Virus record (IMG/VR): IMGVR_UViG_3300008111_000002
Span: 145,837 to 209,836 of that record
DNA length: 64,000 bases
Reading direction: 5' to 3' (one strand)
Part shown: piece after piece, positions 43,742 to 61,134 of the stretch
How the letters are laid out: every line of letters begins with the position of its first letter
Position numbering within the stretch: the stretch's first letter is position 1
Translations under genes and position numbers: made by a program
Notes under the pieces: generated by a model
Told to the model about the DNA's origin: nothing
Seen by the model: the letters and a program-made list of their open reading frames with translations, nothing else
The model's database searches: none

Positions 43742-43816
43742 TCTATCGCTCCTTGGTGTCACTGCGTTGTTGCAGTGTTTATAGTATACCCTCAGCTGCC
43801 CAAAATGTCAACCAAT

Positions 43817-44050
43817 TTACTCCGGTTTGAACACTAGATATTTGTGCTGTTTCAACAGCTGGATTGCCGCTCGGACCTCCCTGGCTCTGAGTTCCTGATA
43901 CTCTAGGTTCTCACGTGCGGCCTTCAGAGTCTGCTCCTCGTCCTGATGATTAAAGAAGTGGTGTGTGCTGATGTACCACCTCTTACCCTCGTCTATGATC
44001 ATCTTTATGGTGCCAAGGTTCTTGTACTGCTGGATCTCATTGACTTTCAT
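43817..44050 (-). CDS. hypothetical protein
   Basis: 77-aa ORF. Confidence 0.55.
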   Translation of the reverse strand: MKVNEIQQYKNLGTIKMIIDEGKRWYISTHHFFNHQDEEQTLKAARENLEYQELRAREVRAAIQLLKQHKYLVFKPE

Positions 44051-44127
44051 AGTGGCTTCTTTCTAGAATAAAAAAGCCCGGGGAGTCCCCTCAACCCGGG
44101 CAAGGGGATCCAATCCCCGGAGCAACC

Positions 44128-44310
44128 TTAACGATATCCCTTTTGACGTATCATCAGCGTGGCCACCCACATCAAGGCCACACCCACTAGGCTGACTGCT
44201 AGACTGCACAGCAGATCGTAATCCGTAGTGCTCTGCTCAATGCCGCCTACCCCGCCTGCGGCTAGGATGATACCCATGAATACAAAAAATGCTATGACTC
44301 GATCTGACAT
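44128..44310 (-). CDS. small two-TM membrane protein
   Basis: SD AAGGAG, own promoter, two hydrophobic helices. Confidence 0.6.
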   Translation of the reverse strand: MSDRVIAFFVFMGIILAAGGVGGIEQSTTDYDLLCSLAVSLVGVALMWVATLMIRQKGYR

Positions 44311-44547
44311 GTTCTGCTCCTTTGTTTAACTGTTTACAGTATAGCTTCTCCGGCCCAACCTGTCAACCAAAATTTAATTTAATCTGATTGATCTCTCGGA
44401 CCCGGCCCCGAGGTTTCTTCTGCAGATAGAACGCGAATCCTACGCGAAAGATCTTAACGAAATGCAGTCCGCCTACTCGCTTGTATGAAATCATCTGATC
44501 GCTCCTTGATTGAAAGGGGACTTACGCTGTCGCTGCCCCGAAACTGT

Positions 44548-44844
44548 TTAATAAACTTCGTCTGCGTAACCGTAGTCTTCGTCTGTGCCGTAGCCTGCGC
44601 TGGCCATTGCTGAATCAAAATCTCCGTCCATGCTTTCGTCCGGAGCACCCCAGGCGCACTCACGTTCCTGTGCGTTGGTCAACTCCCAATCTTCCTGAAT
44701 CTTTGCCTTGGCCAACTCCACGTCCCCGCCGCACAGTTCCAGCACATCGTTATAATCTGCTGCGTCCCAGCACTCGGCAACCCAGTGGCCGCCTGCTTCG
44801 TAGTTGTCCATTGCGAACTGTTGCAGTTGTTGGATTTTGCTCAT
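44548..44844 (-). CDS. acidic hypothetical protein
   Basis: SD AAGGAG, promoter with leader hairpin. Confidence 0.65.
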   Translation of the reverse strand: MSKIQQLQQFAMDNYEAGGHWVAECWDAADYNDVLELCGGDVELAKAKIQEDWELTNAQERECAWGAPDESMDGDFDSAMASAGYGTDEDYGYADEVY

Positions 44845-44923
44845 TTTGGGCTCCTTTGTTTAGTTCACTGCGTTTGTGCAGTGTCTAAAGTATAGCGCAG
44901 GTTGTCCAATTTGTCAACCAAAA

Positions 44924-45211
44924 TCAGCAGCGATTTGTCTGGTAGGGTTTTCTTTGATTTTTAGGGAGGTGTCCCGCGCACATCTTTTCAGCGGCACGAT
45001 CCCAGTGCGGAACCTGAGCGATCAAACTTTCTCCAGGCTTTGGATCCCACGGGCGGTCACGAGGATCTCTACGATTCTCTGCCACGATGGTTTCTAAGGC
45101 TGCACAGCCTGTTAATGCACAGAGGATGAGTGCTGTACCGCACCACCTGCCTGCTGATGATCCCAAAGTAGCTTTCTGGTTACCAGCGTGTTGACCTTGT
45201 TCTCTAGCCAT
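44924..45211 (-). CDS. possible lipoprotein (start uncertain)
   Basis: ALILCALTGC lipobox-like segment. Confidence 0.35.
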   Translation of the reverse strand: MAREQGQHAGNQKATLGSSAGRWCGTALILCALTGCAALETIVAENRRDPRDRPWDPKPGESLIAQVPHWDRAAEKMCAGHLPKNQRKPYQTNRC

Positions 45212-45375
45212 TTCAGTTCCTCTTCTGTGAGTGTGTCAGTGTCCTGCTCGCCCTGCAGTACCTTAATTATAGCTTGGGTTTGATCCTGTGTCAAGCTGTG
45301 ATATTCACTTTCAACCCACTGAGTCAACTGCCGTCCCAGCTGCTGAGTTCTTCCTATCTTGCGCCAATCATTCAT
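45112..45375 (-). CDS. hypothetical protein
   Basis: 87 aa, coupled to upstream gene. Confidence 0.5.
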   Translation of the reverse strand: MNDWRKIGRTQQLGRQLTQWVESEYHSLTQDQTQAIIKVLQGEQDTDTLTEEELKWLENKVNTLVTRKLLWDHQQAGGAVQHSSSVH

Positions 45376-45745
45376 TTGAGGTTGCCTTGATTAATTCATT
45401 GCCCTCGACTATGACCAAACGCACATTGTTCATCTTGCTCTTGAGATCATCTATAAGGCTGTCACGATCACGGCCTTGGCCAAGGAATGAATCATCATCC
45501 TTGCGAAAGGCGTAGAGCTGACCTTGGTGCTGCTCTAGAGTTACTTCAATGACTGTGAGTTCATCTTCGGGGGTGGGTTCTGTCTCGAGTTCATACTTCT
45601 TCATCTGAGCCTTGAGCTGCTGCTCAGTGATGCCCATGTCTCGCATTATGGACAACATGGTGAAACGAGAAAATGCGGCATGTAGTCTCCATCCTATTGC
45701 TACGCCCAGGACCAAGACCAAAATCGTTAGAGTTGCATCATCCAT
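45368..45745 (-). CDS. N-terminally membrane-anchored hypothetical protein
   Basis: MDDATLTILVLVLGVAIGW; TAAATA upstream on the minus strand. Confidence 0.6.
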   Translation of the reverse strand: MDDATLTILVLVLGVAIGWRLHAAFSRFTMLSIMRDMGITEQQLKAQMKKYELETEPTPEDELTVIEVTLEQHQGQLYAFRKDDDSFLGQGRDRDSLIDDLKSKMNNVRLVIVEGNELIKATSNE

Positions 45746-45806
45746 AATATTATTTAATCTATTTGTGTGTATAGTGCGGGCAGCGGGGCCTTGGGCCCCA
45801 ACTGCC

Positions 45807-46151
45807 TCAATCCAGCCTAGAACCAGCGTAGGCTTGGAATCCGTATTTCTTAAACACCTGTGCTGCGGCCTCTGCGCCTGCTTCCAGTGTGTCCACATTC
45901 TGGCAACCAAACTTACTTGGGTTCCACATCTGCAGTCCCCCTGAGTAGGCTGGGCGGATATCGCATTCTTTCAAGGCCTTGCCCAACTTGGTATTTCCCT
46001 TGACGCCGTGGATGGTAACCCAGGCGAAGCCACAGGCAAACTGATCCTGACCGCCCAACCTCTCTTGGAAGAACTTGGCTGCTGCCTGATGGGCTGCGGT
46101 CTGTGCCTCTTGAACCACTGCAGGGATCTGCTCTGGAGTTACTGTGATCAT
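45807..46151 (-). CDS. conserved-looking phage hypothetical protein
   Basis: CGFAWV...Q.V...EAGAEAAA.V...GSRLD pattern. Confidence 0.65.
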   Translation of the reverse strand: MITVTPEQIPAVVQEAQTAAHQAAAKFFQERLGGQDQFACGFAWVTIHGVKGNTKLGKALKECDIRPAYSGGLQMWNPSKFGCQNVDTLEAGAEAAAQVFKKYGFQAYAGSRLD

Positions 46152-46273
46152 TGTGCGGTCTCCTTCATGATGGTCTGTGTCTTGCCCACGGCCTTGTCAA
46201 TTGCTGAGGCCACGCCCGAGATACCAACTGTGGCCACGAACATGCCTGCCACGAACGCTATCAAGATTTTCAT
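46148..46273 (-). CDS. 41-aa signal/TM peptide
   Basis: MKILIAFVAGMFVATVG...; ATGA overlap with next gene. Confidence 0.55.
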   Translation of the reverse strand: MKILIAFVAGMFVATVGISGVASAIDKAVGKTQTIMKETAQ

Positions 46274-46371
46274 CGCTCACTCCTTGTTGTCTAAGTGTTT
46301 ACAGTATACTACCTTGCCTGCCCTTTGTCAACCAAAATAAAGACCCTGCTGTGTGCAGGGCCTTTGCTTAG

Positions 46372-46626
46372 TTAATTTACAATTATAATGTTATTTGTTG
46401 CTAGTTGCTGTTTTGCTGATTGTAATGCTTTGTTAATTGCTTGTGCTTTTTGTTGTGCAGTGTCTGTAATATTGCAAATGTCCCCGGTAGCGTAAACTGC
46501 GCTGCGTTGTGTTATGTGACTGTTATTGCAGAAGCTTACTAAAATGCGTAGTGTTTTTAGCTTTTTGTTTTGTACAATTTTAGCAAAAGCTTTTTGTGCA
46601 AGTATTGCGTTAGCGTAAGTTTGCAT
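46372..46626 (-). CDS. hypothetical protein, compositionally biased (Q/A/K/N/I; no Glu, Pro or Trp)
   Basis: SD AAGGAG, own promoter and terminator. Confidence 0.6.
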   Translation of the reverse strand: MQTYANAILAQKAFAKIVQNKKLKTLRILVSFCNNSHITQRSAVYATGDICNITDTAQQKAQAINKALQSAKQQLATNNIIIVN

Positions 46627-46698
46627 TGTTGCGCTCCTTTTTGTTTAACAGTGTGTATATAATAGCACCAGCTGTCCAAAAAGTCAACCAAAATGTTC

Positions 46699-46725
46699 AA
46701 TAACCCGGCACTGCGCCGGGTTATT
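46699..46725. terminator. intrinsic terminator
   Basis: AATAACCCGGC-actgc-GCCGGGTTATT perfect 11-bp stem. Confidence 0.75.
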
Positions 46726-46733
46726 GCTAACAG

Positions 46734-47009
46734 TTACGCATACAAGTAATTGTCGGTGCAATAGTGTACAGTTTTATAAAACTTGCTTTGTGCGTCGGTG
46801 TACATGTGCATAATTGTGTCGCAAAGTTGGACTGCATTTTTATTTTGCATAAACTGTACAAGTGCTGCGTAAATTGTAACAATGTCGGTGTGTTGCTCGG
46901 CGCAGACAGTGTTGTCGGCGTTGACGTCGACAGTGCGTAAGTATTTTGCAATGTCGGCTTGCAAAAGTTGTACAATAATTGCTACGTCGGCGTTAGTAAC
47001 TTTTTGCAT
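46734..47009 (-). CDS. hypothetical protein, compositionally biased
   Basis: ATG after GGAG (MQKVTNADV...). Confidence 0.6.
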   Translation of the reverse strand: MQKVTNADVAIIVQLLQADIAKYLRTVDVNADNTVCAEQHTDIVTIYAALVQFMQNKNAVQLCDTIMHMYTDAQSKFYKTVHYCTDNYLYA

Positions 47010-47139
47010 TGTTAGCTCCGGTAGTTGCACTGCGTTTTGCAGTGTTTAAATTATAGTACCAAAACGCCGGACTGTCAACCAAAAAATTAGTTGTTAAAAA
47101 AGCAACCGGGTCAGTTGGGGGGCGTGTGCCCCCCTCCCC

Positions 47140-47619
47140 TTACTCTGCAGTTACCACGCTGCCTAGTTTGATGTTAAACACAATGCTGTCGTCCCCCGCC
47201 CTAAACTCGCTTGCCAGTGCCGCTGCCTGCGCCTCATCCCTAGTAATCTCTACACCGTTGCGTGTGTAGCGTGGCGCTTTGCGTTCCGCAGTCTTGTCCA
47301 TTGTGCATCGCACATAGTATTCGCCCTTGTGTGCGATAATGTAGGGGAATACAGCCCACTCGCCCCATGGCAAACCTGCATTCTCTGCTGGCAGTTCGCC
47401 AGTTGCTCGCTTCTCAATCACTTCCTCAATCTCGTCGTATACCTGTCCGATGATTGCGGTAAACTCTGAACGCTTAACAATAGCGTCCTGTCCCTTGCGT
47501 ACCTTCAACATACGCTCCGTGACAAACTTGACTGGCTGTTGCTTCTTGCTCAACACCAAGTCCAACAGTTGTTGTGTGTTGTTGTCTGTGCCCTGAACTA
47601 CTAGTTGTGCTATTTGCAT
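47140..47619 (-). CDS. hypothetical protein
   Basis: 159 aa, SD AAGGAG, promoter. Confidence 0.65.
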   Translation of the reverse strand: MQIAQLVVQGTDNNTQQLLDLVLSKKQQPVKFVTERMLKVRKGQDAIVKRSEFTAIIGQVYDEIEEVIEKRATGELPAENAGLPWGEWAVFPYIIAHKGEYYVRCTMDKTAERKAPRYTRNGVEITRDEAQAAALASEFRAGDDSIVFNIKLGSVVTAE

Positions 47620-47843
47620 TTGTTGCTCCTTAGTTGCCTGCGTATCGCAGTATCATTAGTATATGGCCAGCACACCAAAATGTCAACCAAAATATCAAAT
47701 GTCCCATCAGTCCGTAGGGTTATTCATCATGTTCGTTCATCGTCATCATGCAGACATTCTAACACCGTTCGTCCATTTGGTCAAGCCAAAAAAAAGCCCT
47801 GAGCACGTAGCCCAGGGCCTGCCAATCCCGGGAGCGAATCGGG

Positions 47844-48140
47844 TTAGGCAGCAACAGTTGCCGCAGCAGCAGTACTTGCTGTAGCTGTGGCAGGGTTCTT
47901 CTTCGCGGTGTAGGCGATCGCAGCTTCCACAGCAGCATTGCCAGCACCAAAGCCACGAGCCACGAGTTCTTGAACGATCTCACCTTTGGTCATTGGCTTG
48001 CCAAGATCAACCAGCTCAACACCAGTGTGTCCGTTCTTGGCCAGAATCTTGATACGCATCTGGTCATTGGCGAAACGCAGCTTGGTCTTGCCGTTAAGGG
48101 TTGAAACACCTGCTACACTAAAACGCTTGTCAGTCGACAT
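47844..48140 (-). CDS. hypothetical protein with Ala/Thr-rich tail
   Basis: 98 aa, SD GAGAGG, promoter and terminator. Confidence 0.65.
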   Translation of the reverse strand: MSTDKRFSVAGVSTLNGKTKLRFANDQMRIKILAKNGHTGVELVDLGKPMTKGEIVQELVARGFGAGNAAVEAAIAYTAKKNPATATASTAAAATVAA

Positions 48141-48385
48141 AATAATTACCTCTCTGTGTGTGAATAAAAACTACCAACCAATTTGATAGCATTTTGAGTA
48201 TACTACCAAACCATTTGTCCGTCAACCAATTATTTTTCCAAATTGTTTGGAATTGGCAACAATTGCAATAGTTCTTCCACCCTGCGATGATCTGCATCGC
48301 CCGCCCCACCGCATTCGATGGAGAAGGCAAAATTAAATGTTCTTGCCATGCTGTTTCCCTATATAGTCGTATATAGCAGCGGGGC

Positions 48386-49241: not shown

Positions 49242-49306
49242 AGTTCGCTCCTGTTTAGTTAGTGTGTATATAATAACACACACTAACCAAACTGTCAACC
49301 AAAATC

Positions 49307-49666
49307 TTATACAACCTTGACCTTGCTATAGCCTGCGGACAACAATGCCAGAGCATCTTGTGCAGTTGCTGCCATAGTCACTACACGCTTACGGTTAATA
49401 TGGCCAGTAGTTGGATAGTAACGACCACCGCCATTGCCGATGGCATTGAAGTTACCACTACCAGGATTGAATCGATTATTGTTTCCCAGAATCCAACGAT
49501 TGAGGCGACCGTCCTTGATTGATCGAAGGTGATCACTGTTTTCGAGAATGTTCATTCTCTTAGACATATCCTCGCTCCAGTAACCAAGAGCGTTGGCCAC
49601 GTCTTTAGTATAGCACAGGGGATGAGCAGCGACGTATTCGCAAATCATCTGATTTTGACTTTTCAT
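49307..49666 (-). CDS. hypothetical protein, possible N-terminal winged HTH
   Basis: ICEYVAAHP..YTKDVANALG...SKRMNILE. Confidence 0.5.
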   Translation of the reverse strand: MKSQNQMICEYVAAHPLCYTKDVANALGYWSEDMSKRMNILENSDHLRSIKDGRLNRWILGNNNRFNPGSGNFNAIGNGGGRYYPTTGHINRKRVVTMAATAQDALALLSAGYSKVKVV

Positions 49667-49732
49667 GGGTTCTCCATAAAGTGTTGTTTAGTTCAAACAG
49701 TATAACAGGGGGTTGCCCCCCTGTCAACCAAT

Positions 49733-50086
49733 TTATGCCTCTGCAAATGCCTCCAACGCTGCCTGTGCCGCACCGTCCAGCATTACGCCATCTTGTGCTT
49801 TAATCTTGTCTGCAGTTACCTTTATGCGGTATGCGTCCATCTCTGCAGTCTTTGCTTCCATAGCAGGCCACACTACGTCTTGCGGGTTAAGGTAAGCACC
49901 TGTGTAGTCTACCTTGTCCTCTTTCAGTGTAATCTCGCCTGCCTTAATGCCTTCAAACACCATGCCCCATGTAGGCTGTTGCGGACGGCCAGTAGGGCCA
50001 AACAGTTCCACTGCCTTTGCCTGCAGTTTCTCTGTTGCAATTTCATTCAAGCGACGGAGAAAGTAATTGCGTTGTTCCTGTTCCAT
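49733..50086 (-). CDS. hypothetical protein
   Basis: 117 aa, SD AGGAG, hairpin promoter. Confidence 0.65.
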   Translation of the reverse strand: MEQEQRNYFLRRLNEIATEKLQAKAVELFGPTGRPQQPTWGMVFEGIKAGEITLKEDKVDYTGAYLNPQDVVWPAMEAKTAEMDAYRIKVTADKIKAQDGVMLDGAAQAALEAFAEA

Positions 50087-50108
50087 AATACGCTCCTAAA
50101 AAGTCTGT

Positions 50109-50160
50109 CACTGCAAAATTGCAGTGTGTGTATATTAACACACACTGCCCAATCTGTCAA
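50109..50160 (-). promoter_or_regulatory. promoter with -10 inside a 10-bp inverted repeat, plus leader hairpin
   Basis: CACTGC-aaaatt-GCAGTGTGTG-tatattaa-CACACACTGC...TGTCAA. Confidence 0.85.
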
Positions 50161-50165
50161 CCGTT

Positions 50166-50477
50166 TTATGCCTCAAAATTTTCTACAATCATAATACGTC
50201 CAGCCAGCAAGTCTTCTACCAGTTGCACTGCTCGCCGCTCTGTGCCGCCAATGTGCCAGTCATAGTGCCCCATGGGAGTGCCATACTCTTTCCAGTCGTA
50301 AATCGTTGCTACTGTGCCGTCGCTAAACTCAATGCACCACTCCTGCGTGGTCTTGTCGCCACCGCCCATCCCCTCCCCCAGCAAGTCCTGCAGCTTTGCA
50401 AAGGTGGTTCCTACATAGCCCTGCAGATGTGTGCCGTTGAACTTTTCTGCAAAGTAATCGTAAACTCGTGCTTCCAT
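50166..50477 (-). CDS. conserved-looking phage hypothetical protein
   Basis: LQGY..T..KL..LLG....DKT..EW.IEF.DG.VATIYDWK.....WHIGG. Confidence 0.65.
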   Translation of the reverse strand: MEARVYDYFAEKFNGTHLQGYVGTTFAKLQDLLGEGMGGGDKTTQEWCIEFSDGTVATIYDWKEYGTPMGHYDWHIGGTERRAVQLVEDLLAGRIMIVENFEA

Positions 50478-50495
50478 GTTGCGCTCCTAGTATGT

Positions 50496-50547
50496 CACTG
50501 CGTTATTGCAGTGTGTGTATAGTAACACACACTGCCCAAAATGTCAA
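50496..50547 (-). promoter_or_regulatory. promoter with -10 inside a 10-bp inverted repeat, plus leader hairpin
   Basis: CACTGC-gttatt-GCAGTGTGTG-tatagtaa-CACACACTGC...TGTCAA. Confidence 0.85.
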
Positions 50548-50550: not shown

Positions 50551-50766
50551 TTAAATTGTGCTGTACTTTCTGTATTCCTTGCCGCCCACGTTGCTGTACC
50601 ACAGCCCGTTAGTTTTTTTGTAATAACCCTGCTTGTACCAGTTTTTAATCTGTGTTGCGTGTTGCTGTCTGCCCTGCTCTGCAATAGCTTGTTCCAACGT
50701 CATTGTAGCACCTGCTGCGTCTTGTGCTGCCTGCTGTGCTTGTTGTTGTGCGTGTAGTGCTAGCAT
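50551..50766 (-). CDS. hypothetical protein (no Pro)
   Basis: SD AAGGAG; Gln/Ala-rich. Confidence 0.6.
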   Translation of the reverse strand: MLALHAQQQAQQAAQDAAGATMTLEQAIAEQGRQQHATQIKNWYKQGYYKKTNGLWYSNVGGKEYRKYSTI

Positions 50767-50783
50767 AGCTTGCTCCTTAGTTG

Positions 50784-50835
50784 CACTGCGTTATTGCAGT
50801 GTGTGTATATTAACACACACTGCCCAAAATGTCAA
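50784..50835 (-). promoter_or_regulatory. promoter with -10 inside a 10-bp inverted repeat, plus leader hairpin
   Basis: CACTGC-gttatt-GCAGTGTGTG-tatattaa-CACACACTGC...TGTCAA. Confidence 0.85.
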
Positions 50836-50844: not shown

Positions 50845-51168
50845 TTATACTTCCATGCTTGCAAGTTCGTCTTCTTGCATACCCTGCTCTGTAAAGCGCA
50901 CACCAAACCCTAGTGCATCACTAATAGCACTTTCAAATGCACTGTCTGTGTATATGTCCCATGTGCTGTTGTGCGTTACATTAACCATAACGCTTACATT
51001 GTCGTCATAAGCATTTGTCACAATGCTAATGCCTGTCACACGCACTTGCCTGTCAGCCTCGCAGCCCCACAAGCCGTCGCCAGCTGTCCAAACAGTAAAG
51101 TCGCAGTCAAAGTCTTGTGCAGTGTAGTCGCCGTCAACCTCAAACCGTGTAAGTGTAAGTTTTTGCAT
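50845..51168 (-). CDS. acidic hypothetical protein (no Pro)
   Basis: SD AGGAG; 107 aa. Confidence 0.65.
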   Translation of the reverse strand: MQKLTLTRFEVDGDYTAQDFDCDFTVWTAGDGLWGCEADRQVRVTGISIVTNAYDDNVSVMVNVTHNSTWDIYTDSAFESAISDALGFGVRFTEQGMQEDELASMEV

Positions 51169-51242
51169 TGTGTGCTCCTGTGTGTCACTGCGTTAGTGCA
51201 GTGTGTATATAATAGCACCAGCTGTTCAAAATGTCAACCAAA

Positions 51243-51401
51243 TTATTCTGCGTAACCGTCTTCTTCCCAGCCCTCGTAGGTGGCATTAACTCCCGCAGAG
51301 TTTACATCAGTCATCCCAGCAATCTCGTCTGCTGCTTCTGCTGTGTCTGCTTCAACCTGTAAAGTATATGTTACAGTCTGTGTGTAATAAAATTTAGGCA
51401 T
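51243..51401 (-). CDS. small hypothetical protein
   Basis: ATG after AGGAGCGAG (MPKFYY...). Confidence 0.55.
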   Translation of the reverse strand: MPKFYYTQTVTYTLQVEADTAEAADEIAGMTDVNSAGVNATYEGWEEDGYAE

Positions 51402-51422: not shown

Positions 51423-51462
51423 ACAGCGTGTGTATAGTAACACACGCTGTCCAAACTGTCAA
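51423..51462 (-). promoter_or_regulatory. promoter with a covaried inverted repeat around -10
   Basis: ACAGCGTGTG-tatagtaa-CACACGCTGT...TGTCAA. Confidence 0.85.
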
Positions 51463-51686: not shown

Positions 51687-51753
51687 TTGTTCGCTCCTTT
51701 GTTGCTATGTGTGTATTATAGCACTATGTGTCCAAAATGTCAACCAAAATAAA

Positions 51754-51838: not shown

Positions 51839-52090
51839 CTACGACTGTCGCAGCTCCTTGCGCTTGCGGATAATGGGCTTGTCTACTTTAACTGCAATTT
51901 TAGTCTTGCGGTAGTTAATGTGTATGCCTTGTGCGCTAAACACTTCCCCCAGCACTAGCTTCATACGCTCTGCGCGGAGTTTTTGCTTGTCTGTATACAA
52001 GCTAGCGTTGGCAATATTGCGCATACTTGCATCCTGCGCTGCCCACCACTTAACAGTTGCTTCTTTAGTATCCAGTTGCTTATAACGCAT
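51839..52090 (-). CDS. basic hypothetical protein
   Basis: SD AAGGAG, promoter with leader hairpin. Confidence 0.55.
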   Translation of the reverse strand: MRYKQLDTKEATVKWWAAQDASMRNIANASLYTDKQKLRAERMKLVLGEVFSAQGIHINYRKTKIAVKVDKPIIRKRKELRQS

Positions 52091-52265
52091 AACACGCTCC
52101 TTGGGTTACACTGCACATCGCAGTATCAATACTATAACACCAGTTGTCCAATCTGTCAACCAATAAAAACCCAGTAGGCAGTAAGGACAACGGCGTAGAT
52201 CACAAGTGCGGGGATGACCTGTGACATTGTGTCACTAACAATCCATTCCGCGTATTCTTTATCGT

Positions 52266-53505: not shown

Positions 53506-53940
53506 CCAAGTAGTCGTTGTACTCTTGCTCGTACTCCTGCCACTCTTCGTCCGTCATATCGTAGGTTTCAGGGTTGTTGAAGCCATCCATATTAGTCTCC
53601 TAGACTGTGTTGAACATGATCACAGTATACGACAGAGTCACGACTCTGTCAACCTATTTCACTTAGAAATCCCTGCAGCTTGTTCTCGGGAACATTGCGC
53701 AGCAGTTCTTCGATCGCAGTGAGGTCACCGCTCTCAACGTCAATGAGGATCTGCTCGAGGGCAGCATCAATCAAACCTTGATCTAGTTCCATGATGATTC
53801 CTTTCAGTCTGTGTGTGGAGGAAGGTCGTAGTCCGCTGGGTCTGCGGGAAACCTAGGTATGTTGTTGGGGTCCTTCATACAAACTCCTATGTTGTTTAGT
53901 GTTCGTATTATATGATAGAGTCACGACTCTGTCAAGAACT

Positions 53941-54513
53941 TTATTTGAAGCCCATGACCATGTAACGGTTAAAGCCCCAGTCAGGATATTGAAATCGTTT
54001 AGTACCTGTGAACAGTTGTTCCTTCAAAGGCCATGCAGCAGCAAAAGCCTCGTCTGACTCATAGCTGGCCACGTGATCTTCATGAGGCATATCGTTCCCT
54101 TGCAGCACTGTGAATGTATTCTCAGGGATGTTGTCGAACCACTGACGTGACTCTATGTGCTCTACGCTGGTGTTGATTATAATACTAGGCTGATGTCCCA
54201 ATGCCCACCAGTTGATGTTGTTGACGTCGTGCGTAACAGCTGAGAACTCTCCCTGCCAGTGCCACAGACGATTAACGTGTACCGCGATAGATTCGCATTC
54301 AGGATCTATGTCCCAACTGCGAACATGCTGGATGGGGATTCTACTTTGTGTGCGTAGGATGAAATTGGTAAGTGCATACCAGCCTGCGAAGATCTCTATC
54401 CTATGGCCCTGCAGCGGGGCCTGTATGTCATTGATGGAGAGTACCTGACTCAGCTTCTCAGCCAGCCAAATCTTACTGCCAATTTGACCGGATGAGAAGC
54501 TGTCCCAATTCAT
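53941..54513 (-). CDS. class I SAM-dependent methyltransferase-like protein
   Basis: GQI.SK.WL, IFAGWY, SWDIDP, INTSVEH. Confidence 0.6.
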   Translation of the reverse strand: MNWDSFSSGQIGSKIWLAEKLSQVLSINDIQAPLQGHRIEIFAGWYALTNFILRTQSRIPIQHVRSWDIDPECESIAVHVNRLWHWQGEFSAVTHDVNNINWWALGHQPSIIINTSVEHIESRQWFDNIPENTFTVLQGNDMPHEDHVASYESDEAFAAAWPLKEQLFTGTKRFQYPDWGFNRYMVMGFK

Positions 54514-55712
54514 TAGGCCTTCTCGTCGTAGATAACAGTCTGACCAAAGGGTGCTTCGTTATTACTGCCCTTGACAATGAACAAGGTATCGCAGTAGTCT
54601 TCATCACCCCAACCACCGCAGGGGTAGCCGTCTGTAAACATAATGAACTTCTTGGGCTGGATGTCGTTCTCTTTCATAAACTGCCAGTTGGCTTCAAAGT
54701 CCGTACCACCACCGCCTTGGAGATCATAAGTCAACAGTTCGTCGCCGTTGTCCTGCGTAATCTTCTGCGGATTGTAAACGTCTGTGTCAAAGCACCAGAT
54801 GTGAATGTTGTAGTCTGAATATTGATCCATGATGCCCTTGACTTCACTCAAGAACACCTTAGCATCAGCATCGCCAATTGAACCACTCATATCCAATGCA
54901 ATGGCCACGTCAATGGTCTCATCGTTCTTCATGCCTGGAAGGATAGCGCCACTGTGCATTGACTTACGATTAGGGCGAGTAAAGGAGTAGTCGTTGCGGA
55001 TGATGCTTTGAATGTTCATACGGATCAACTCACGCCAGTTCATCTTAGGCTCAGTGAGGTCTTTGATCAAACGCTGAATGCCCAACGGAGTCTTACCTGC
55101 ACCTGCGGCCGCGGCACTCTGAACCATAGCCTGCTTGATCTCATCGCGAATAGCCTGTGCTTCTTCTTTGGTAAGAACTGGAGCACCCTTGCCATCCTTA
55201 CCATCTTTGCCTGCACCCTGACCTTCGTGCTCTTGCTCGTTGATATGCTGGTCCAACAATTCGCCCAACTGATCCAGACTAATGGTCTTGACGTTCTTCA
55301 TCAGGTCGTCGTAGATCTCTTCCCAGGCCATGCCGCGATACTTGTTGTCTTGGCAAATCTTAACTTCAGTGATACGCTCGCCAATGCGGTCGTCTACAAG
55401 GATCTGGTTCACTGCGAAGTCTTGTGCGATGTTAGACATCTGACGATCACGCGAACCTACACGACCAAAGTGATCAAACACACAATGGCAAATCTCATGT
55501 GCGAACAAGAACTCTAGTTTCTTAACGCTGAGCTTCTCAACGAACTTGGTGTTGTAGTAGAAGTTGCGTCCGTCAGTTGCGGCTGTAGGGCACCAGTCGT
55601 CTGCACACTTGATCTGCATACGAGTTGCCATGTTACCAAAGAACGGTTGCTTCAGCAGAAGCCCTACACGAGCGGTAATGAGCTTTTCAACGATTGCGGG
55701 ATCTTCTTTCAT
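54513..55712 (-). CDS. DUF2201-type protein: N-terminal HExxH metallopeptidase-like domain plus C-terminal vWA domain
   Basis: TAATDG, AHEICH; MIDAS DMSGS, GGGGTDF, FTDG. Confidence 0.88.
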   Translation of the reverse strand: MKEDPAIVEKLITARVGLLLKQPFFGNMATRMQIKCADDWCPTAATDGRNFYYNTKFVEKLSVKKLEFLFAHEICHCVFDHFGRVGSRDRQMSNIAQDFAVNQILVDDRIGERITEVKICQDNKYRGMAWEEIYDDLMKNVKTISLDQLGELLDQHINEQEHEGQGAGKDGKDGKGAPVLTKEEAQAIRDEIKQAMVQSAAAAGAGKTPLGIQRLIKDLTEPKMNWRELIRMNIQSIIRNDYSFTRPNRKSMHSGAILPGMKNDETIDVAIALDMSGSIGDADAKVFLSEVKGIMDQYSDYNIHIWCFDTDVYNPQKITQDNGDELLTYDLQGGGGTDFEANWQFMKENDIQPKKFIMFTDGYPCGGWGDEDYCDTLFIVKGSNNEAPFGQTVIYDEKA

Positions 55713-55826
55713 ATGGGCTCCTTTGTCTAAGTATGTATATTATATGGCCTAGTGCCTATTCTGTCAACCAAAAAAGGTGAGTGAGGGACCCTGAACAAGT
55801 CCCCCACTCTAGCCATGGTGGAGGTC

Positions 55827-56903
55827 TTAATTCTCCATGGCCTTCAAAACATACTTACCGTATTTCTTGTGGAACTCATCAAAGTTCTTCATCTTTGTTG
55901 CGTCCAACGGCAAGTTGTAGTTAGTAAGGGCAGTCTTAGCACCCATCACAACCAACTCTGTTGGGAAGTTATCCATCATGTAGCGGAAGAAGCAGTCCGC
56001 CTGACTGTCCCAATTAGTAGCCTTCTTGTCTGCTTGATCTTTGAGCTCGTAGCACAAGCTCACAGTCAAGGAATACATGGCTGACACTTCCTTAATCTGC
56101 AGGTCCTTAACCTTGCCGCTAAGGATGTCGGGAGCCTTAGGCAGTTTACCAGCAATCTTACGATGTGCCATAAACTTAACAGCCAAGCCGTCACCAATAG
56201 CACCTGCAACCAAGTCAGTGAGCGTGTCAGTGTCAGTGTCATCGTCCTGCAGGAGATCGCTGACGAACACCCATGAACGAGGAGTTGCAAAAGCCTTAGA
56301 GCTGGACTTGGGATCAAAGTCATACAAGTCCTGCTTGGCAAAGCCTACATAACCAACAACCTCAGGATGGATCTTGTTAGCAGTAGCCCACTCTTGGAAA
56401 TCGTCAAAGTCAACTTTGGCTTCCAAGTGCAGGAAGCGGTTGGCCAACGGAGCAGGCATACGATAGGTAACACCCTTGTCGCCATCGCGGTTACCAGCCG
56501 CTACAATGTCCACGCCCTTGGGCAGGATGTATTGTCCTACACGACGGTTCAGAACCAACTGGTAGGCGGCCGCTTGGACTGCGGGAGGAGCGGAGTTGAG
56601 CTCGTCCAAGAAGATGATTGCACGGCTGTCTGGGTCAGTGGGCAATTCTGCTGGGGGTGCCCAAACCATTGTGCCTTGTTCTGCGTTGTAATAAGGGATA
56701 CCTTTGATGTCTGTAGGTTCCCAGAGTGGTAGACGAATATCAATTACTTCTCTCCCCTCGGAGTCGCCAATCTGCTTGACGATGTCACTCTTACCAATAC
56801 CGGGCGGGCCCCACAGGAACACCGGACGGCGCTTTTGAATTGCTTTTTGAATTGCCTTCTTGGCCTTCTTAGGACCAACCTGGCGAATAGAATTATCAGA
56901 CAT
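55827..56903 (-). CDS. MoxR-like AAA+ ATPase
   Basis: GPPGIGKS, FLDELN, AAGNR, LANRF, TPRSW. Confidence 0.9.
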   Translation of the reverse strand: MSDNSIRQVGPKKAKKAIQKAIQKRRPVFLWGPPGIGKSDIVKQIGDSEGREVIDIRLPLWEPTDIKGIPYYNAEQGTMVWAPPAELPTDPDSRAIIFLDELNSAPPAVQAAAYQLVLNRRVGQYILPKGVDIVAAGNRDGDKGVTYRMPAPLANRFLHLEAKVDFDDFQEWATANKIHPEVVGYVGFAKQDLYDFDPKSSSKAFATPRSWVFVSDLLQDDDTDTDTLTDLVAGAIGDGLAVKFMAHRKIAGKLPKAPDILSGKVKDLQIKEVSAMYSLTVSLCYELKDQADKKATNWDSQADCFFRYMMDNFPTELVVMGAKTALTNYNLPLDATKMKNFDEFHKKYGKYVLKAMEN

Positions 56904-57623: not shown

Positions 57624-57757
57624 TATCGCTCCTTGTGTCTAAGTATGTATATTATATGACCTCTTTTGGATTTTGTCAACCAAAAGAAAAGCCGCACTAG
57701 GCGGCTCAAAGAAATTCCCCGGGAGCGAATCGGATCTTTTACTTTGTGTAGTTCCTC

Positions 57758-58003
57758 TTAGGCGAACACGTTAGCGCGGCTACCAGTGATGTCACGAGCA
57801 GAAACGCTGTACTGAGCGCGGCCGTCTTTGTTCTTGTGCTTGCGAACAACAAGACCTGCTTGACGGAACTCAGTCATACGAGCGCGGAGATTCTTGATAC
57901 CGTAGGTGCTGTCAGCTTGCAAAGAGCTGAGGCTGTTACCTGTACCGCGGAGATGTGACTCCAAGAATTCCTTTTGAGTAGTTTTGATAGTTGTAAATGG
58001 CAT
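57758..58003 (-). CDS. small winged-HTH-like DNA-binding protein
   Basis: LESHLRGTG.SLS..QA...YGIKNLRARMTEFRQAGLVV. Confidence 0.55.
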   Translation of the reverse strand: MPFTTIKTTQKEFLESHLRGTGNSLSSLQADSTYGIKNLRARMTEFRQAGLVVRKHKNKDGRAQYSVSARDITGSRANVFA

Positions 58004-58095
58004 TTTAAGTTTCCTTTGTTAAATGGCTAACATTCGTTAGCGTCCTGTTATTATGCACTCTTGACCATCCCTGATCAAGAGTGCATTTTGCCAAT

Positions 58096-58284
58096 TTACT
58101 TCTTAACAGTAATATCTGAACGAATAAACATACCAATTACCAAAACAGCCAACCACGTCCAGAAGGTGAACGGAATGGCCAGAGTGGGGAACAGTGTGTT
58201 CAATGCCCAAATAACTGCCCAGGGGAACAGTACTATCAGAACCAATAGGGCAATAATAAACCCTGCGACACCAAGCTTGATCAT
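58096..58284 (-). CDS. small membrane protein
   Basis: Two hydrophobic helices, SD AAGGAG. Confidence 0.6.
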   Translation of the reverse strand: MIKLGVAGFIIALLVLIVLFPWAVIWALNTLFPTLAIPFTFWTWLAVLVIGMFIRSDITVKK

Positions 58285-58286
58285 AA

Positions 58287-59369
58287 TTAACTCCTTTTCA
58301 TAACAGTGACTTCTGCCATGCTCTTCCAATTAGTAGGAAAGCTCTTGCGCAGATCTGCACATTTTAGCACAGTTCTAAGGCTGAGTTCACGCAGACGATT
58401 CTTGTTCACGTGAATAAATTCTAGGATCTCGTCCTTGACACAGTCTTCAAACTCATAACTATCTAGCATTCCGTCCTGCGTGATCTGCTTGATCCTGAGC
58501 ACTTTCTCACGCTCAGTATCCATTTGGAGATCAATATAGTGACAGCGTGACTCTAGTGCCGCCAAGTGATCCTGAAGCTTCTTAGAGCGAACATTCTCAA
58601 ACTTGATGTTAGTGATAAAGATAGCGCCTGCTTTGAACTCAAACTTGTCCGGCACTCCCTCTGTGCGCAGTACACGGCTGTCAGTGTTCCACGAAATGGT
58701 TCGCTTACTGCCACTGTCCAAAGCCGCTTTGAGGATGTTCAAGCTCAAGTCATCTAGTAGCACTGAGTCGCAGTCATCAAACACCACGACATTGCCCTTC
58801 TCACTGTACTTGTAGAGCTTGCTATATAGACCCACTGCTGACATTGCGCCCTTGACAATCTCGTACTTGGGCTTGCGTTGTCCCATCATGTCAAACAGAT
58901 CGTCCTTGCTCAGTACTTCTTCAACACCAAACGATTTGCCTACACCCGGAGGGCCTGTAACAATCATTGCGCGAACTGTGCCTTCTTTCACGGCTTTGGT
59001 CATCTCTTTCAGTACATCAAAGCGACCCCGTAGGCGTTCAATGATCTGTTCATCAGTCTCGTGTGCAATCACTGCATCTGGAACTGAGTTCTGCACCAAG
59101 CTCATAACACCCTCTGGCTCTGTGCTCTTGACGGGTTCTGTAATAGCAGGCAGTTCACCCTCTACTACAGTATACGAACGTGGACCCTGGCAACGGATGC
59201 GGATATTACGCTCTGGGAATCCCTCACAGCTAGCACCGTTGACAGTAACATAGCCTGTGCCGTCACTGCCCACGCGAAACTGCTCTACCAATTCAAATCG
59301 CCGACCCGCAACTGAAGTGTCCTGTCCGCGGATTTTGTAAGTACCTTCTAGTATTTCAATAACAGCCAT
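58287..59369 (-). CDS. AAA+ ATPase with N-terminal extension
   Basis: TGPPGVGKS, VVFDDCD, LKAALD, FITN, ALESRC. Confidence 0.8.
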   Translation of the reverse strand: MAVIEILEGTYKIRGQDTSVAGRRFELVEQFRVGSDGTGYVTVNGASCEGFPERNIRIRCQGPRSYTVVEGELPAITEPVKSTEPEGVMSLVQNSVPDAVIAHETDEQIIERLRGRFDVLKEMTKAVKEGTVRAMIVTGPPGVGKSFGVEEVLSKDDLFDMMGQRKPKYEIVKGAMSAVGLYSKLYKYSEKGNVVVFDDCDSVLLDDLSLNILKAALDSGSKRTISWNTDSRVLRTEGVPDKFEFKAGAIFITNIKFENVRSKKLQDHLAALESRCHYIDLQMDTEREKVLRIKQITQDGMLDSYEFEDCVKDEILEFIHVNKNRLRELSLRTVLKCADLRKSFPTNWKSMAEVTVMKRS

Positions 59370-59435
59370 GCTCGCTCTCCTGTGTGTGTAAAGTCATTAT
59401 TATAGGGCCACTAGGGCCCTATGTCAACCAAAACC

Positions 59436-59903
59436 TTACCAGCTGCTACAGTATTCAAAATCCCAAGCTTCTGGCAGTTCCAAACAGTCGTTGACAATTT
59501 GGACTGTGGTCTCTAGATCATCGTAGTAGTATTGATCGTAGTCAGTGCTGCCAAAGAAGAATCCGCTGGCTGAGGGCAACAGAGTTGCTGCACGATCTCT
59601 GTTGGCCAGTACTTCTTCACAGAGCTGCTTGAGCTTGATCAACTGCTCCCTGCTGACGTAGTGAGGCTTACATTCGTCCTCGCCCCCCTGCACGTTGTCA
59701 ACGAACCATTGATGAATAGCATTGGCCTTGCGCCAGTAGCCGGCCTCAATGCGTACTTCTTTGACGCAGCTGTCTGCACCCGATCGATCCCGGCCCTTGA
59801 GTTCTGGGAACTGCTCTTGAATAGCTTCTGCACGTTCCTTGTCTGCTTCATCCATGTAACCGCTGATGTAGCGTTTACCGCTGAGATACATGTCTAAACC
59901 CAT
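59436..59903 (-). CDS. conserved-looking phage hypothetical protein
   Basis: MGLDMYL, GYWRKANAIH.WF, GFFFGSTDYD..YY. Confidence 0.7.
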   Translation of the reverse strand: MGLDMYLSGKRYISGYMDEADKERAEAIQEQFPELKGRDRSGADSCVKEVRIEAGYWRKANAIHQWFVDNVQGGEDECKPHYVSREQLIKLKQLCEEVLANRDRAATLLPSASGFFFGSTDYDQYYYDDLETTVQIVNDCLELPEAWDFEYCSSW

Positions 59904-59946
59904 GATTCGCTCCTAAGTAGTTTAAAGGAAGTACTAGTATACGATC

Positions 59947-60438
59947 TCAGCTGCCCGTTGTCAATCGGAGAACGCCTGGGCGGCCCTTGACCGGTTCAAA
60001 ACCTTCAATAAACATGTGATGAAGGTCGCCTGAATTTGTGATCAGATTGTTGGCCAACATGTACATGGTTCCCCAGGTACGACCCTGCAGTTCAGCTTCC
60101 ACAGGCTCAGGGCCCCAATGACCGTCATAGATCACAGTGTGATAGTCTTGATAGGGATGCTCTTGGTAGAGATCATCAACTTCGTAGATGCTCCAAACTG
60201 AGCCCAAATCAAATTCAACAGCAAACGAACGATAGTTCTCGTACTTGCGATCAAATGCTTCAGTGTCCTGATCATAGGCATGCTTTAGCCCCTGTTCAAA
60301 ACCCCTGATCACAGCCTGCAGCTGATCAGCGAGATTATTGTTGATCACTCCCGTGAGCTTTTGCTGCACTGTGCGCAGCTGGCAGAGAGTGTTGTGTACC
60401 GTGGTAAAGTCTTCGCCCTTGAGTGTAACAGTTTGCAT
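59947..60438 (-). CDS. hypothetical protein
   Basis: 163 aa. Confidence 0.6.
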   Translation of the reverse strand: MQTVTLKGEDFTTVHNTLCQLRTVQQKLTGVINNNLADQLQAVIRGFEQGLKHAYDQDTEAFDRKYENYRSFAVEFDLGSVWSIYEVDDLYQEHPYQDYHTVIYDGHWGPEPVEAELQGRTWGTMYMLANNLITNSGDLHHMFIEGFEPVKGRPGVLRLTTGS

Positions 60439-60439
60439 A

Positions 60440-60814
60440 TTAGACCTCTACAGTGTGTGAATGACGCAGCGACAGCATGAACAGACGTTGGCTTAACTGT
60501 GCTGCTGCCTGTTTGGCCTGCTGTAGCGCAGTACCGATTATATCCTCAGCTGTGCCATCTGTCAATACCTCGCGGGCATCACCATAGCAACAGCCACCTA
60601 GATACTCTGAGGCCAGCTCGTGATCATCTATCAGTACACGAACACGCAGCATGAACCAGTCATAGTAGCCCGTGTCAATCTGCTCACAGAGCTGACTGAT
60701 ATCAGTAACTGAGTCATCGAAACAGTCCCGAGGATGCATGTCTTCCCAGGTCTTGTCCACTATGATGTCAAAGCCATCCCGCTCCATGCGGGCCAATTGA
60801 TCAAAATGTCGCAT
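60440..60814 (-). CDS. hypothetical protein
   Basis: MRHFDQL..., EYLGGC.Y. Confidence 0.6.
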   Translation of the reverse strand: MRHFDQLARMERDGFDIIVDKTWEDMHPRDCFDDSVTDISQLCEQIDTGYYDWFMLRVRVLIDDHELASEYLGGCCYGDAREVLTDGTAEDIIGTALQQAKQAAAQLSQRLFMLSLRHSHTVEV

Positions 60815-61058
60815 ACAGTTCCACCTTTGGATCAAGCTTGAACAATTCGCCCTCAGCACCCTTTAACAGTGTGTAGCGGCGCTGTACTTCAGATCTGCTG
60901 AGTTCACCATCGCAGGTAAGATTCTCGGGACTCAGTGCTGCTGCAATGTGATCAGCAACACGTTGACGATCTTCAAAGGTCTCTAAGGTTAACAATTGCT
61001 GCTGGAAGATCTCGCGGAAGCGATTCTCCTGAGCCAAGTACTTGTTGAGGTATTTCAC
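60801..61058 (-). CDS. hypothetical protein
   Basis: GTG start after GGAGCGAAC; LSPENLTCDGELS. Confidence 0.6.
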   Translation of the reverse strand: MKYLNKYLAQENRFREIFQQQLLTLETFEDRQRVADHIAAALSPENLTCDGELSRSEVQRRYTLLKGAEGELFKLDPKVELYATF

Positions 61059-61134
61059 AGTTCGCTCCTGTAAACACTGCACATCGCAGTCTTAACAGTA
61101 TACGATCACAGATCCAAACTGTCAACCACAAAAA

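What the first reader, a model, noticed from the sequence alone, without database searches (positions are those of the whole stretch)
43760..61090. Conserved 5'-leader hairpin (C)ACUGC-N5/6-GCAGU(G) on about ten early mRNAs
Seen: copies at 43760, 44866, 47028, 47638 (short), 50109, 50496, 50784, 51186, 52110 and 61076. Each lies between the predicted TSS and the SD, with a fixed stem sequence and variable loop. Inference: a 5'-end stabiliser or a binding site for a phage regulator (translation control or nut-like antitermination). The fixed stem sequence suggests recognition rather than stability alone.
Basis: partly seen in the sequence, partly recalled or inferred. Interest (0 to 1): 0.6.

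Follow-up and report, generated by a model that had tools for sequence, protein, structure and literature searches.

The report
Hairpin at start of phage early mRNAs
Ten strong host-type early promoters of an uncultivated freshwater jumbo phage are each followed, exactly at the predicted first transcribed base, by the same small RNA hairpin, most likely a built-in cap-like fold that shields the 5' end of these short mRNAs from decay; a real but fairly ordinary kind of element in an unusual multi-copy form.

Summary
ACTGC-N5/6-GCAGT occurs 9 times in the early block against 0.23 expected, and there is one slipped copy at 47638.

All ten copies lie on the minus strand, the strand of the genes. 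Each follows a near-consensus sigma70 promoter. In every copy the A of ACUGC is the 7th base after the -10 hexamer, which is the predicted +1. The hairpin is therefore 5'-terminal with no overhang, not just somewhere in the leader. The SD stays unpaired.

The window is the right end of a 209.8 kb lake jumbo myophage. Its 48% GC early block carries about 27 such promoters.

Related phages mostly have unstructured leaders before the same genes (8 of 597 promoters have a +1 hairpin), so this is a lineage-specific expansion.

Other stems occupy the same position: in the leader of a conserved 98-aa gene (12 of 14 variants, with differing stem sequences) and in unrelated phages.

My best reading is a cis-acting 5'-end protective stem-loop carried on shuffling promoter cassettes (0.55).

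A sequence-specific binder remains possible (0.2). The stem never varies, the fold is weak (-6 kcal/mol), and an identical hairpin occurs in unrelated phages.

A nut-like role is not supported. No TSS data could be obtained.

The parts
43739..43811 (-). Promoter (-35 at 43811-43806, -10 at 43788-43783), predicted +1 at 43776, hairpin 43776-43761 (loop AACAAC), free SD, ATG at 43741-43739 of a 25-codon ORF
44842..44917 (-). Promoter 44917-44889, +1 at 44882, hairpin 44882-44867 (loop ACAAAC), SD, ATG of the 98-aa ORFan 44844-44548
47007..47078 (-). Promoter 47078-47050 (preceded by a terminator at 47117-47103), +1 at 47043, hairpin 47043-47029 (5-nt loop AAAAC), ATG of the 91-aa ORFan
47617..47686 (-). 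Promoter 47686-47658, +1 at 47651, slipped 'short' hairpin 47650-47638 (CUGCG-AUA-CGCAG), ATG of the 159-aa ORFan
50084..50160 (-). Promoter 50160-50132, +1 at 50125, hairpin 50125-50110 (loop AAUUUU), ATG of the 117-aa gene; an 11-bp inverted repeat also brackets the -10
50475..50547 (-). Promoter 50547-50519, +1 at 50512, hairpin 50512-50497 (loop AAUAAC), ATG of the 103-aa gene; inverted repeat around the -10
50764..50835 (-). Promoter 50835-50807, +1 at 50800, hairpin 50800-50785 (loop AAUAAC), ATG of the 71-aa ORFan; inverted repeat around the -10
51166..51237 (-). Promoter 51237-51209, +1 at 51202, hairpin 51202-51187 (loop ACUAAC), ATG of the 107-aa gene; a recombination joint to the hairpin-less twin promoter at 46687 is seen in a lake DNA run
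52088..52159 (-). Promoter 52159-52131, +1 at 52124, hairpin 52124-52110 (loop GAUGU), ATG of the 83-aa ORFan
61056..61125 (-). Promoter 61125-61097 (terminator 61156-61135 just upstream), +1 at 61090, hairpin 61090-61076 (loop GAUGU), GTG start of the 85-aa gene; the orthologous promoter in L070 keeps the identical hairpin
48138..48225 (-). Comparison element: promoter 48225-48197, +1 at 48190, a different 8-bp 5'-terminal hairpin at 48190-48170 followed by a U-run, in the leader of the conserved 98-aa gene 48140-47844

Best explanation
The element is a 5-bp (sometimes 6-bp) RNA stem-loop that forms the very 5' end of ten short early mRNAs made by the host sigma70 RNA polymerase. Because the initiating pppA is itself base-paired, the transcript offers no single-stranded 5' tail. 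Established bacterial work names that tail as what the pyrophosphohydrolase RppH and the 5'-end-dependent nucleases (RNase E, or RNase J in other hosts) need. The hairpin would therefore lengthen the life, and so raise the yield, of these small monocistronic early messages, while leaving the CA-rich leader and the SD open for ribosomes. It is one module of a compact cassette: terminator or promoter-embedded stem-loop, then consensus promoter, then +1 hairpin, then leader and SD. This cassette has multiplied in front of ORFan genes in this phage lineage and is reshuffled by recombination between copies. That history, plus the preferred ACU start of these promoters, keeps the stem sequence uniform. 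Shown here: the motif, its excess over chance, its strand, its fixed register to the -10, its fold, the free SD, its lineage-specific spread, other stems at the same site, and the recombination joints. Inferred: the TSS, the formation of the fold in vivo, and the protective effect.
For: Nine exact copies against 0.23 expected. All ten copies have exactly 6 nt between the -10 and ACUGC, with Y at -1 in 9 of 10 and A at +1. The hairpin is the minimum-energy fold of every leader and the SD is unpaired in it, except in the 52124 and 61090 leaders, where a second weak helix forms around the SD or start codon; hairpin-less leaders are 23-30 nt and unstructured, hairpin leaders are 35-42 nt. The slipped copy at 47638 keeps the 5' arm and re-pairs in another register, so pairing is what is preserved. 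Loop length varies (3, 5 or 6 nt), which suits an RNA fold and not a dimeric DNA site. In G000, 11 of 23 promoters that have an SD carry a 5'-terminal hairpin at that offset (the ten family copies plus the look-alike at 45294, which I did not count as a family member) and none do at offsets 8-14. In relatives the figure is 8 of 597, no more than at control offsets. The leader of the 98-aa gene has a hairpin within 2 nt of the predicted +1 in 12 of 14 distinct orthologous leaders, with differing stem sequences, which supports both the TSS register and an RNA-level role. Contig L166 carries three different stems at +1 before one conserved leader, and other phage groups use ACUGG/CCAG and ACAGC/GCUG stems there. 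Established knowledge, as reviewed in PMC3997798: 5'-terminal stem-loops and 5'-terminal base pairing stabilise E. coli mRNAs, and RppH needs at least two unpaired 5' nucleotides.
Against: No TSS or half-life data exist; the two metatranscriptome runs gave only a few contigs that cross promoters and say nothing about 5' ends. The fold is weak (-5.8 to -7.0 kcal/mol at 37 C), and whole-leader energies do not differ from dinucleotide shuffles (z from +0.2 to -1.9). The case therefore rests on recurrence and register, not on stability. The stem never shows a compensatory change across about 15 copies in G000, G001, L070, L169 and L187, although the spacers, discriminators and flanks differ and the downstream proteins are only 40-70% identical. 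The 98-aa-gene hairpin does covary over the same set of genomes. The host, and so its RNase set, is unknown.
Confidence: 0.55

Rival explanations
1. The hairpin is a sequence-specific binding site for a trans-acting regulator, either a phage early or middle protein or a host RNA-binding protein. The regulator recognises the ACUGC/GCAGU stem on the RNA (or on both DNA and RNA, as Aca1 and Aca2 do) and co-regulates a regulon of early ORFan genes, for example by translational shut-off or titration.
For: The stem is invariant while everything around it varies. The GAUGU class is identical over 15-16 nt in G000, G001 and L070, in front of diverged or different genes. The fold is too weak to be an impressive stand-alone stabiliser. 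The exact hairpin with loop AAUGUC stands at the same register in three phage groups without detectable homology to one another's loci. There is a precedent: Aca regulators bind conserved 5' UTR hairpins that start right after the TSS, and one regulator can serve several operons (bioRxiv 10.64898/2026.07.27.740549).
Against: No candidate binder was found. The only early protein with a DNA-binding signature (window 49307-49666, weak MarR-like hit) is absent from the hairpin-bearing records G001, L070 and L050, though these are incomplete. The loop, the usual determinant for RNA-hairpin readers, is variable. Other stems occupy the same site. The hairpin lies 8-20 nt from the SD and does not occlude it. 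Control stems give comparable raw counts in IMG/VR (45 loci against 39 and 24).
Confidence: 0.2
2. The repeat has no RNA function of its own. It is a hitch-hiking part of a promoter cassette that spreads and is homogenised by recombination (PeSL-like), or it serves mainly as a patch of homology for cassette shuffling.
For: Promoters 50160, 50547 and 50835 are near-identical over their whole length. Lake DNA runs show joints and foreign sequence attached at the promoter repeats, including a contig that joins 46619-46648 to 51199 onward through the shared promoter. PeSL cassettes behave this way in T4-type phages (PMC2839356, PMC4122927).
Against: In the more diverged copies only the two arms are conserved, and the rest of the cassette is not. 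The register to the -10 is exact in every copy. The slipped copy preserves pairing. Twin promoters 51237 and 46687 differ precisely by the presence or absence of the hairpin.
Confidence: 0.12
3. The inverted repeat is a double-stranded DNA operator overlapping +1, bound by a dimeric repressor that shuts off a subset of early promoters.
For: The site is palindromic and sits at +1 to +16, a classic roadblock position. Three promoters have a third GCAGTG copy in the spacer.
Against: Half-site spacing varies (3, 5 or 6 bp), which dimeric operators rarely tolerate. The slipped copy has lost one half-site yet keeps its pairing. The inverted repeats around the -10 covary between promoters (49298 and 51462 use other sequences), which points to structure rather than a fixed DNA word. 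No repressor gene co-occurs.
Confidence: 0.07
4. The hairpin acts on transcription elongation: either as a nut/put-like antitermination signal on the sense RNA, or as a weak terminator for antisense (+ strand) transcription entering from the late region.
For: On the + strand three copies score as terminator-like, because the complement of the -10 supplies a T-rich tail. boxB is also a 5-bp stem with a small loop (from general knowledge).
Against: Almost every early gene has its own promoter, and several have their own terminator, so antitermination has little to act on. The loop is not conserved and there is no boxA. The antisense stems are short and weak, and ten copies would be redundant. 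Rfam finds nothing here.
Confidence: 0.04

Closest known systems
5'-terminal stabilising stem-loops of bacterial mRNAs (ompA and papA type; Emory, Bouvet and Belasco 1992, as reviewed in PMC3997798)
   Same: A small hairpin at or within a nucleotide or two of the 5' end, upstream of an open ribosome-binding site. It acts in cis, and the stem sequence is in principle arbitrary.
   Different: Here the element is a multi-copy family with one fixed stem, fused at an exact register to consensus phage early promoters. It is only 5 bp and about -6 kcal/mol. Stabilisation has not been measured.
PeSL cassettes of T4-type phages (PMC2839356, PMC4122927)
   Same: Repeated near-consensus sigma70 early promoters combined with a stem-loop, clustered before ORFans in a plastic region, with recombination between copies. 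This phage also places terminator-type stem-loops just upstream of, or inside, many promoters.
   Different: The PeSL stem-loop lies upstream of the promoter and works as a terminator. The element studied here lies downstream, begins at +1, has no U-tract, and becomes the 5' end of the cassette's own mRNA.
Aca1/Aca2 RNA motifs in acr-aca 5' UTRs (bioRxiv 10.64898/2026.07.27.740549)
   Same: Sequence-conserved hairpins that start directly after the TSS of early phage genes of unknown or anti-defence function, sometimes at several operons.
   Different: Those motifs come with an adjacent aca HTH gene and a DNA inverted repeat in the promoter, and binding blocks the RBS. No such gene, paired DNA site or RBS overlap is seen here.
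Lambda-type nut sites (boxA plus boxB)
   Same: A short 5-bp stem-loop in an early leader.
   Different: boxB is read through its conserved loop and works with boxA, once per early operon. Here the loop varies, boxA is absent, and there are ten copies on monocistronic units.
N4 virion-RNAP early promoter hairpins
   Same: A small conserved hairpin tied to phage early promoters.
   Different: N4 hairpins are DNA structures upstream of the start, read by a phage polymerase. These follow a textbook sigma70 promoter and lie in the transcript.

Membership tests
5'-terminal stabilising stem-loop | Stem-loop begins within about 0-2 nt of the transcript's 5' end | tested here: inconclusive
   Met for the predicted TSS: the A of ACUGC is the 7th nt after the -10 in 10 of 10 copies, with Y at -1 in 9 of 10 and R at +1. 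The same register holds for the covarying hairpin of the 98-aa gene. No experimental TSS; the RNA contigs were uninformative.
5'-terminal stabilising stem-loop | Stable fold that leaves the ribosome-binding site accessible | tested here: met
   The hairpin is the MFE and centroid structure of all ten leaders. The SD is unpaired except in the 52124 and 61090 leaders, where a second weak helix forms around it. Stability is only -5.8 to -7.0 kcal/mol and does not differ from shuffles.
5'-terminal stabilising stem-loop | Function depends on structure, not stem sequence | tested here: inconclusive
   Other stems occupy the site elsewhere, but within this family no compensatory change is seen.
5'-terminal stabilising stem-loop | Lengthens mRNA half-life through RppH / RNase E (or RNase J) avoidance | not testable with these tools
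   Needs rifampicin-chase or reporter assays. The host is unknown.
PeSL cassette | Repeated sigma70-like early promoter in a plastic ORFan-rich region | tested here: met
   27 exact TTGACA-N16-18-TAnnnT sites on the minus strand between 43.7 and 62.2 kb, part of 34 in the whole window against 4.06 expected. The downstream genes have no Pfam or PHROG family.
PeSL cassette | Stem-loop is a terminator placed upstream of the promoter | tested here: not met
   The hairpin studied lies downstream of the -10, at +1, without a U-tract. Separate upstream or promoter-embedded stem-loops do exist.
PeSL cassette | Recombination between copies reshuffles genes | tested here: met
   Joints and foreign ends lie at promoter repeats in two lake DNA runs. 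One contig links 46619-46648 to 51199 onward. These are contig-level data only.
Aca-type DNA/RNA regulatory motif | Adjacent HTH or RHH regulator gene that co-occurs with the motif | tested here: not met
   The only wHTH-like early gene (49307-49666, PHROG E=1.6e-4) has no homologue in G001, L070 or L050, or in any fetched locus. Those records are incomplete.
Aca-type DNA/RNA regulatory motif | Hairpin binding occludes the RBS | tested here: not met
   The 3' arm ends 8-20 nt before the SD.
nut site (boxA/boxB) | Conserved loop and an accompanying boxA | tested here: not met
   Eight different loops occur in ten copies. The 35-42 nt leaders hold only the hairpin, a CA-rich stretch and the SD.
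Intrinsic terminator | GC-rich stem followed by a U-tract on the transcribed strand | tested here: not met
   No sense-strand terminator call falls on any copy. Only the antisense strand scores weakly at three copies.
Any Rfam family (including CRISPR repeat models) | Covariance-model match | tested here: not met
   Only the two tRNAs pass. Nothing at the hairpins has E of 1 or less.

The most novel reading that the evidence does not exclude
The ACUGC/GCAGU hairpin is a shared recognition tag. A phage or host factor reads this specific 5'-terminal stem and thereby co-ordinates (times, titrates or protects) a regulon of early ORFan, possibly anti-defence, genes. The tag travels between unrelated lake phages on promoter cassettes because it plugs into the same host machinery.
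Probability: 0.17. Interest if true: 0.75.

Novelty: new variant of a known kind. Interest (0 to 1): 0.45.

Why it matters
If the reading is right, uncultivated jumbo phages build mRNA 5'-end protection directly into portable early-promoter cassettes. That is a third module beside the promoter and terminator of PeSL-type cassettes. It would explain how newly acquired ORFans get strong, durable early expression at once.

It also offers a natural, minimal (16-nt) 5' UTR part fused at an exact register to a consensus sigma70 promoter.

Finally, it gives a clean natural experiment for the question of structure against sequence: the same genes with and without the hairpin in sister phages, and different stems at the same site.

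If instead the stem is a recognition tag, it marks a co-regulated early gene set and would point to an unknown regulator.

Tried and rejected
1. Near-identity DNA search of the region against GenBank phages found no match. The phage was placed only through its terminase, about 54% identical to Pseudomonas phage PA5oct.

2. The Rfam scan at E of 1 or less gave only tRNAs.

3. RNA evidence for the TSS could not be obtained. Two lake metatranscriptome runs hold small parts of the region, but only as contigs. These cross promoters and cannot show 5' ends.

4. RNAalifold on a MAFFT alignment of the 98-aa-gene leaders predicted no structure, because the loops misalign. I used the individual folds instead.

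5. Look-alikes at promoter-like sites 45294 and 60565 were dropped: 45294 is inside an ORF, and 60565 has no SD or start within reach.

6. The MarR-like early protein does not co-occur with the hairpin, so it is not a supported candidate binder.

7. A partial resemblance of CACUGC...GCAG to type I-F CRISPR repeats (recalled from memory) has no support. There is no CRISPR-repeat model hit and no flanking handle sequences.

8. Contigs L002 and L004, which have the same stem, proved unrelated to this phage.

9. The scan of bacterial genomes gave 13 scattered hits against about 9 expected by my rough estimate. It gives no host clue and no sign of a host-wide motif.

10. A T7-promoter-like word at about 48360-48385 is unique in the genome and was dropped.

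11. The large protein searches, structure prediction and complex prediction were not used, because no claim here rests on them.
Full report
**Context**

The window is the last 64 kb of a 209,836-bp virus record. It encodes a very long tail sheath, a large terminase about 54% identical to that of Pseudomonas jumbo phage PA5oct, a UvsX-like recombinase and a DnaB-like helicase. So this is a jumbo myophage.

Near-identical DNA is held by 18 freshwater-lake and 'fungus metagenome' runs from many studies. It is an abundant, uncultivated lake phage of unknown host.

G+C jumps from about 35% to about 48% at roughly 42 kb and stays high to the end of the record. That block is read on the minus strand. 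It contains 27 exact TTGACA-N16-18-TAnnnT promoters between 43.7 and 62.2 kb (34 in the whole window against 4.06 expected). Most have TTTGG just upstream, and each stands before a small ORF with an AGGAG-type SD.

**The observation**

ACTGC-N4-7-GCAGT occurs 10 times in the window against 0.23 expected. The tenth, and three looser matches elsewhere in the genome, are inside genes without any promoter. The 'short' copy at 47638 is a slipped version: the same 5' arm pairs as CUGCG/CGCAG over a 3-nt loop.

The new fact is the register. In all ten copies exactly six bases separate the -10 hexamer from the A of ACUGC. The base before it is a pyrimidine in 9 of 10 copies. By the usual geometry of sigma70 promoters (general knowledge) that A is +1. 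The RNA would then begin with the stem, with no unpaired 5' nucleotide.

The hairpin is the MFE and centroid fold of every leader. The rest of the leader is CA-rich and open, and the SD is free in eight of the ten; in the 52124 and 61090 leaders a second weak helix forms around the SD or start codon. Leaders with the hairpin are 35-42 nt long, against 23-30 nt without it.

**Caveats on the observation**

The stems are weak (-5.8 to -7.0 kcal/mol). Whole-leader energies do not differ from dinucleotide shuffles. The significance comes from recurrence and position, not from thermodynamics.

No transcription start data could be obtained. The only RNA runs are contigs that cross promoters.

**Distribution among relatives**

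A MoxR-like AAA gene of the early block has about 600 relatives in IMG/VR, and a 117-aa early gene has 65.

I collected 597 distinct promoters with an SD from 143 related loci. Only 8 have any 5'-terminal hairpin at the predicted +1, no more than at control offsets. In this genome the figure is 11 of 23, and none occur at offsets 8-14. The eleven are the ten family copies plus the look-alike at 45294, which lies inside an ORF and which I did not count as a family member.

Orthologues of the hairpin-led genes in other phages have plain CA-rich leaders. The family appears in:
- the partial relative G001, with three copies at the same register;
- L070, at the orthologous promoter of window 61125, with an identical 16-nt hairpin although the spacer and leader differ;
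- L169 and L187, plus the more distant L189 and L194.

It is thus an add-on that expanded in one lineage and is not tied to particular genes. One gene has the AAUUUU-loop form here and the GAUGU form in G001. Another has the hairpin in G001 but not here.

**Evidence that the position matters as RNA structure**

The leader of the conserved 98-aa gene (promoter at 48225) carries a different hairpin. It starts within 2 nt of the predicted +1 in 12 of 14 distinct orthologous leaders, exactly at +1 in nine of them, and the stem sequences differ between them.

An unrelated contig (L166) has three promoters with three different +1 stems before the same downstream leader.

Control scans with two other stems (ACTGG/CCAG and ACAGC/GCTG) also recover genuine-looking promoter, +1 hairpin and SD units in other phage families.

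A hairpin placed exactly at +1 of strong sigma70-type phage promoters is therefore a recurrent design whose stem can differ. This matches the established role of 5'-terminal stem-loops and 5'-terminal base pairing in protecting E. coli mRNAs, and the need of RppH for unpaired 5' nucleotides (review PMC3997798).

**Why the stem is nevertheless fixed here**

Three things reduce the force of 'fixed, therefore recognised':
- Seven of the 15 hairpin-less leaders also start ACU, so part of the 5' arm is the promoters' own preferred start.
- Several copies are recent whole-promoter duplicates.
- Lake DNA runs show joints and foreign sequence at the promoter repeats. One contig links 46619-46648 to 51199 onward through the promoter shared by 46687 and 51237. 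This is the behaviour described for PeSL cassettes in T4-type phages.

Points that remain in favour of recognition:
- In the diverged copies only the arms are conserved.
- No compensatory change is seen, although the 98-aa-gene hairpin covaries over the same genomes.
- The fold is weak.
- The exact hairpin with loop AAUGUC stands at the same register in three phage groups that share no detectable homology.
- Aca regulators give a precedent for proteins that read such 5' UTR hairpins.

No binder candidate emerged. The weakly MarR-like early protein does not co-occur with the hairpin.

**Rejected readings**

A duplex-DNA operator is unlikely. Arm spacing varies (3, 5 or 6 bp), and the slipped copy keeps its pairing but not the palindrome.

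A nut-like role is unsupported: the loops vary, there is no boxA, and the genes are monocistronic with their own promoters. Sense-strand termination is excluded because there is no U-tract.

**Verdict**

This is a real, lineage-expanded family of 5'-terminal leader hairpins fused to early promoter cassettes. It is most probably a cis-acting 5'-end protector (0.55), with a sequence-specific binder as the main open alternative (0.2).

The reads call used 5,401 letters. No alternative genetic code, toxin gene or animal virus was involved. The costly protein searches were not used.

Noticed in passing
window 42000-64000 against 1-42000 (genome 188-209.8 kb): The early block has about 48% G+C against about 35% for the rest of the 209.8 kb genome. 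The relative G001 shows the same jump. The early region is compositionally a different world from the structural and replication genes.
   Followed up: partly
window 50132-50160, 50519-50547, 50807-50835, 49270-49298, 51434-51462; also 49699-49727, 53624-53652, 53907-53935, 59399-59427: Many promoters contain an inverted repeat inside the spacer or bracketing the -10, with an 11-bp stem whose loop is the -10 hexamer. The arm sequences differ between promoters but stay complementary. In read-through RNA this long hairpin (about -20 kcal/mol) would capture the 5' arm of the +1 hairpin. It is probably the terminator or 3'-end module of the upstream gene overlapping the next promoter.
   Followed up: partly
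window 48138-48225 (-) and orthologues in L009, L018, L020, L032, L039, L044, L066, L074, L113, L126: The leader of the conserved 98-aa early gene has a 5'-terminal hairpin followed by a U-run and a CACACAGAGAGG-type SD region. The stem covaries widely. It might be an attenuator rather than only a 5' cap-like fold. One RNA contig (run X20) covers this gene.
   Followed up: partly
window 46619-46700 / 51180-51245; 48265; 50843; 51691-51724; 52163: Lake DNA runs carry alternative gene cassettes joined at the promoter repeats: deletions, insertions of sequence absent from this genome, and a 75-nt insertion at 48265. This indicates population-level shuffling of the early ORFan block.
   Followed up: partly
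window 61509-61716 (-): tRNA-Met(CAT) and tRNA-Leu(TAA) lie directly behind a consensus early promoter (61716-61688), so they would be expressed as early transcripts.
   Followed up: no
window 54513-56903 (-): A MoxR-like AAA ATPase and a DUF2201 metallopeptidase/VWA protein form a conserved early pair (78-88% identical in G001). About 600 IMG/VR contigs encode the ATPase.
   Followed up: partly
window 49307-49666 (-): An early 119-aa protein gives a weak MarR-family winged-helix signal (PHROG E=1.6e-4). It has no homologue in any fetched relative.
   Followed up: partly
L165, L163, L171, L185, L186, L190, L192, L196, L197, L199; L166, L264, L265, L268; L202-L234 group: Unrelated phage contigs carry a single strong promoter with a +1 hairpin. 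One 33-36 kb group and one 53-56% GC group use the same ACUGC stem (often with loop AAUGUC). Another family uses ACUGG/CCAG with varying loops. The design seems widespread in uncultivated phages.
   Followed up: partly
window 43.7-62.2 kb promoters: TTTGG recurs both just upstream of the -35 and at spacer positions 2-6 (TTTGG-TTGACA-nTTTGG) in this phage and its relatives. It may be an extra promoter element.
   Followed up: no
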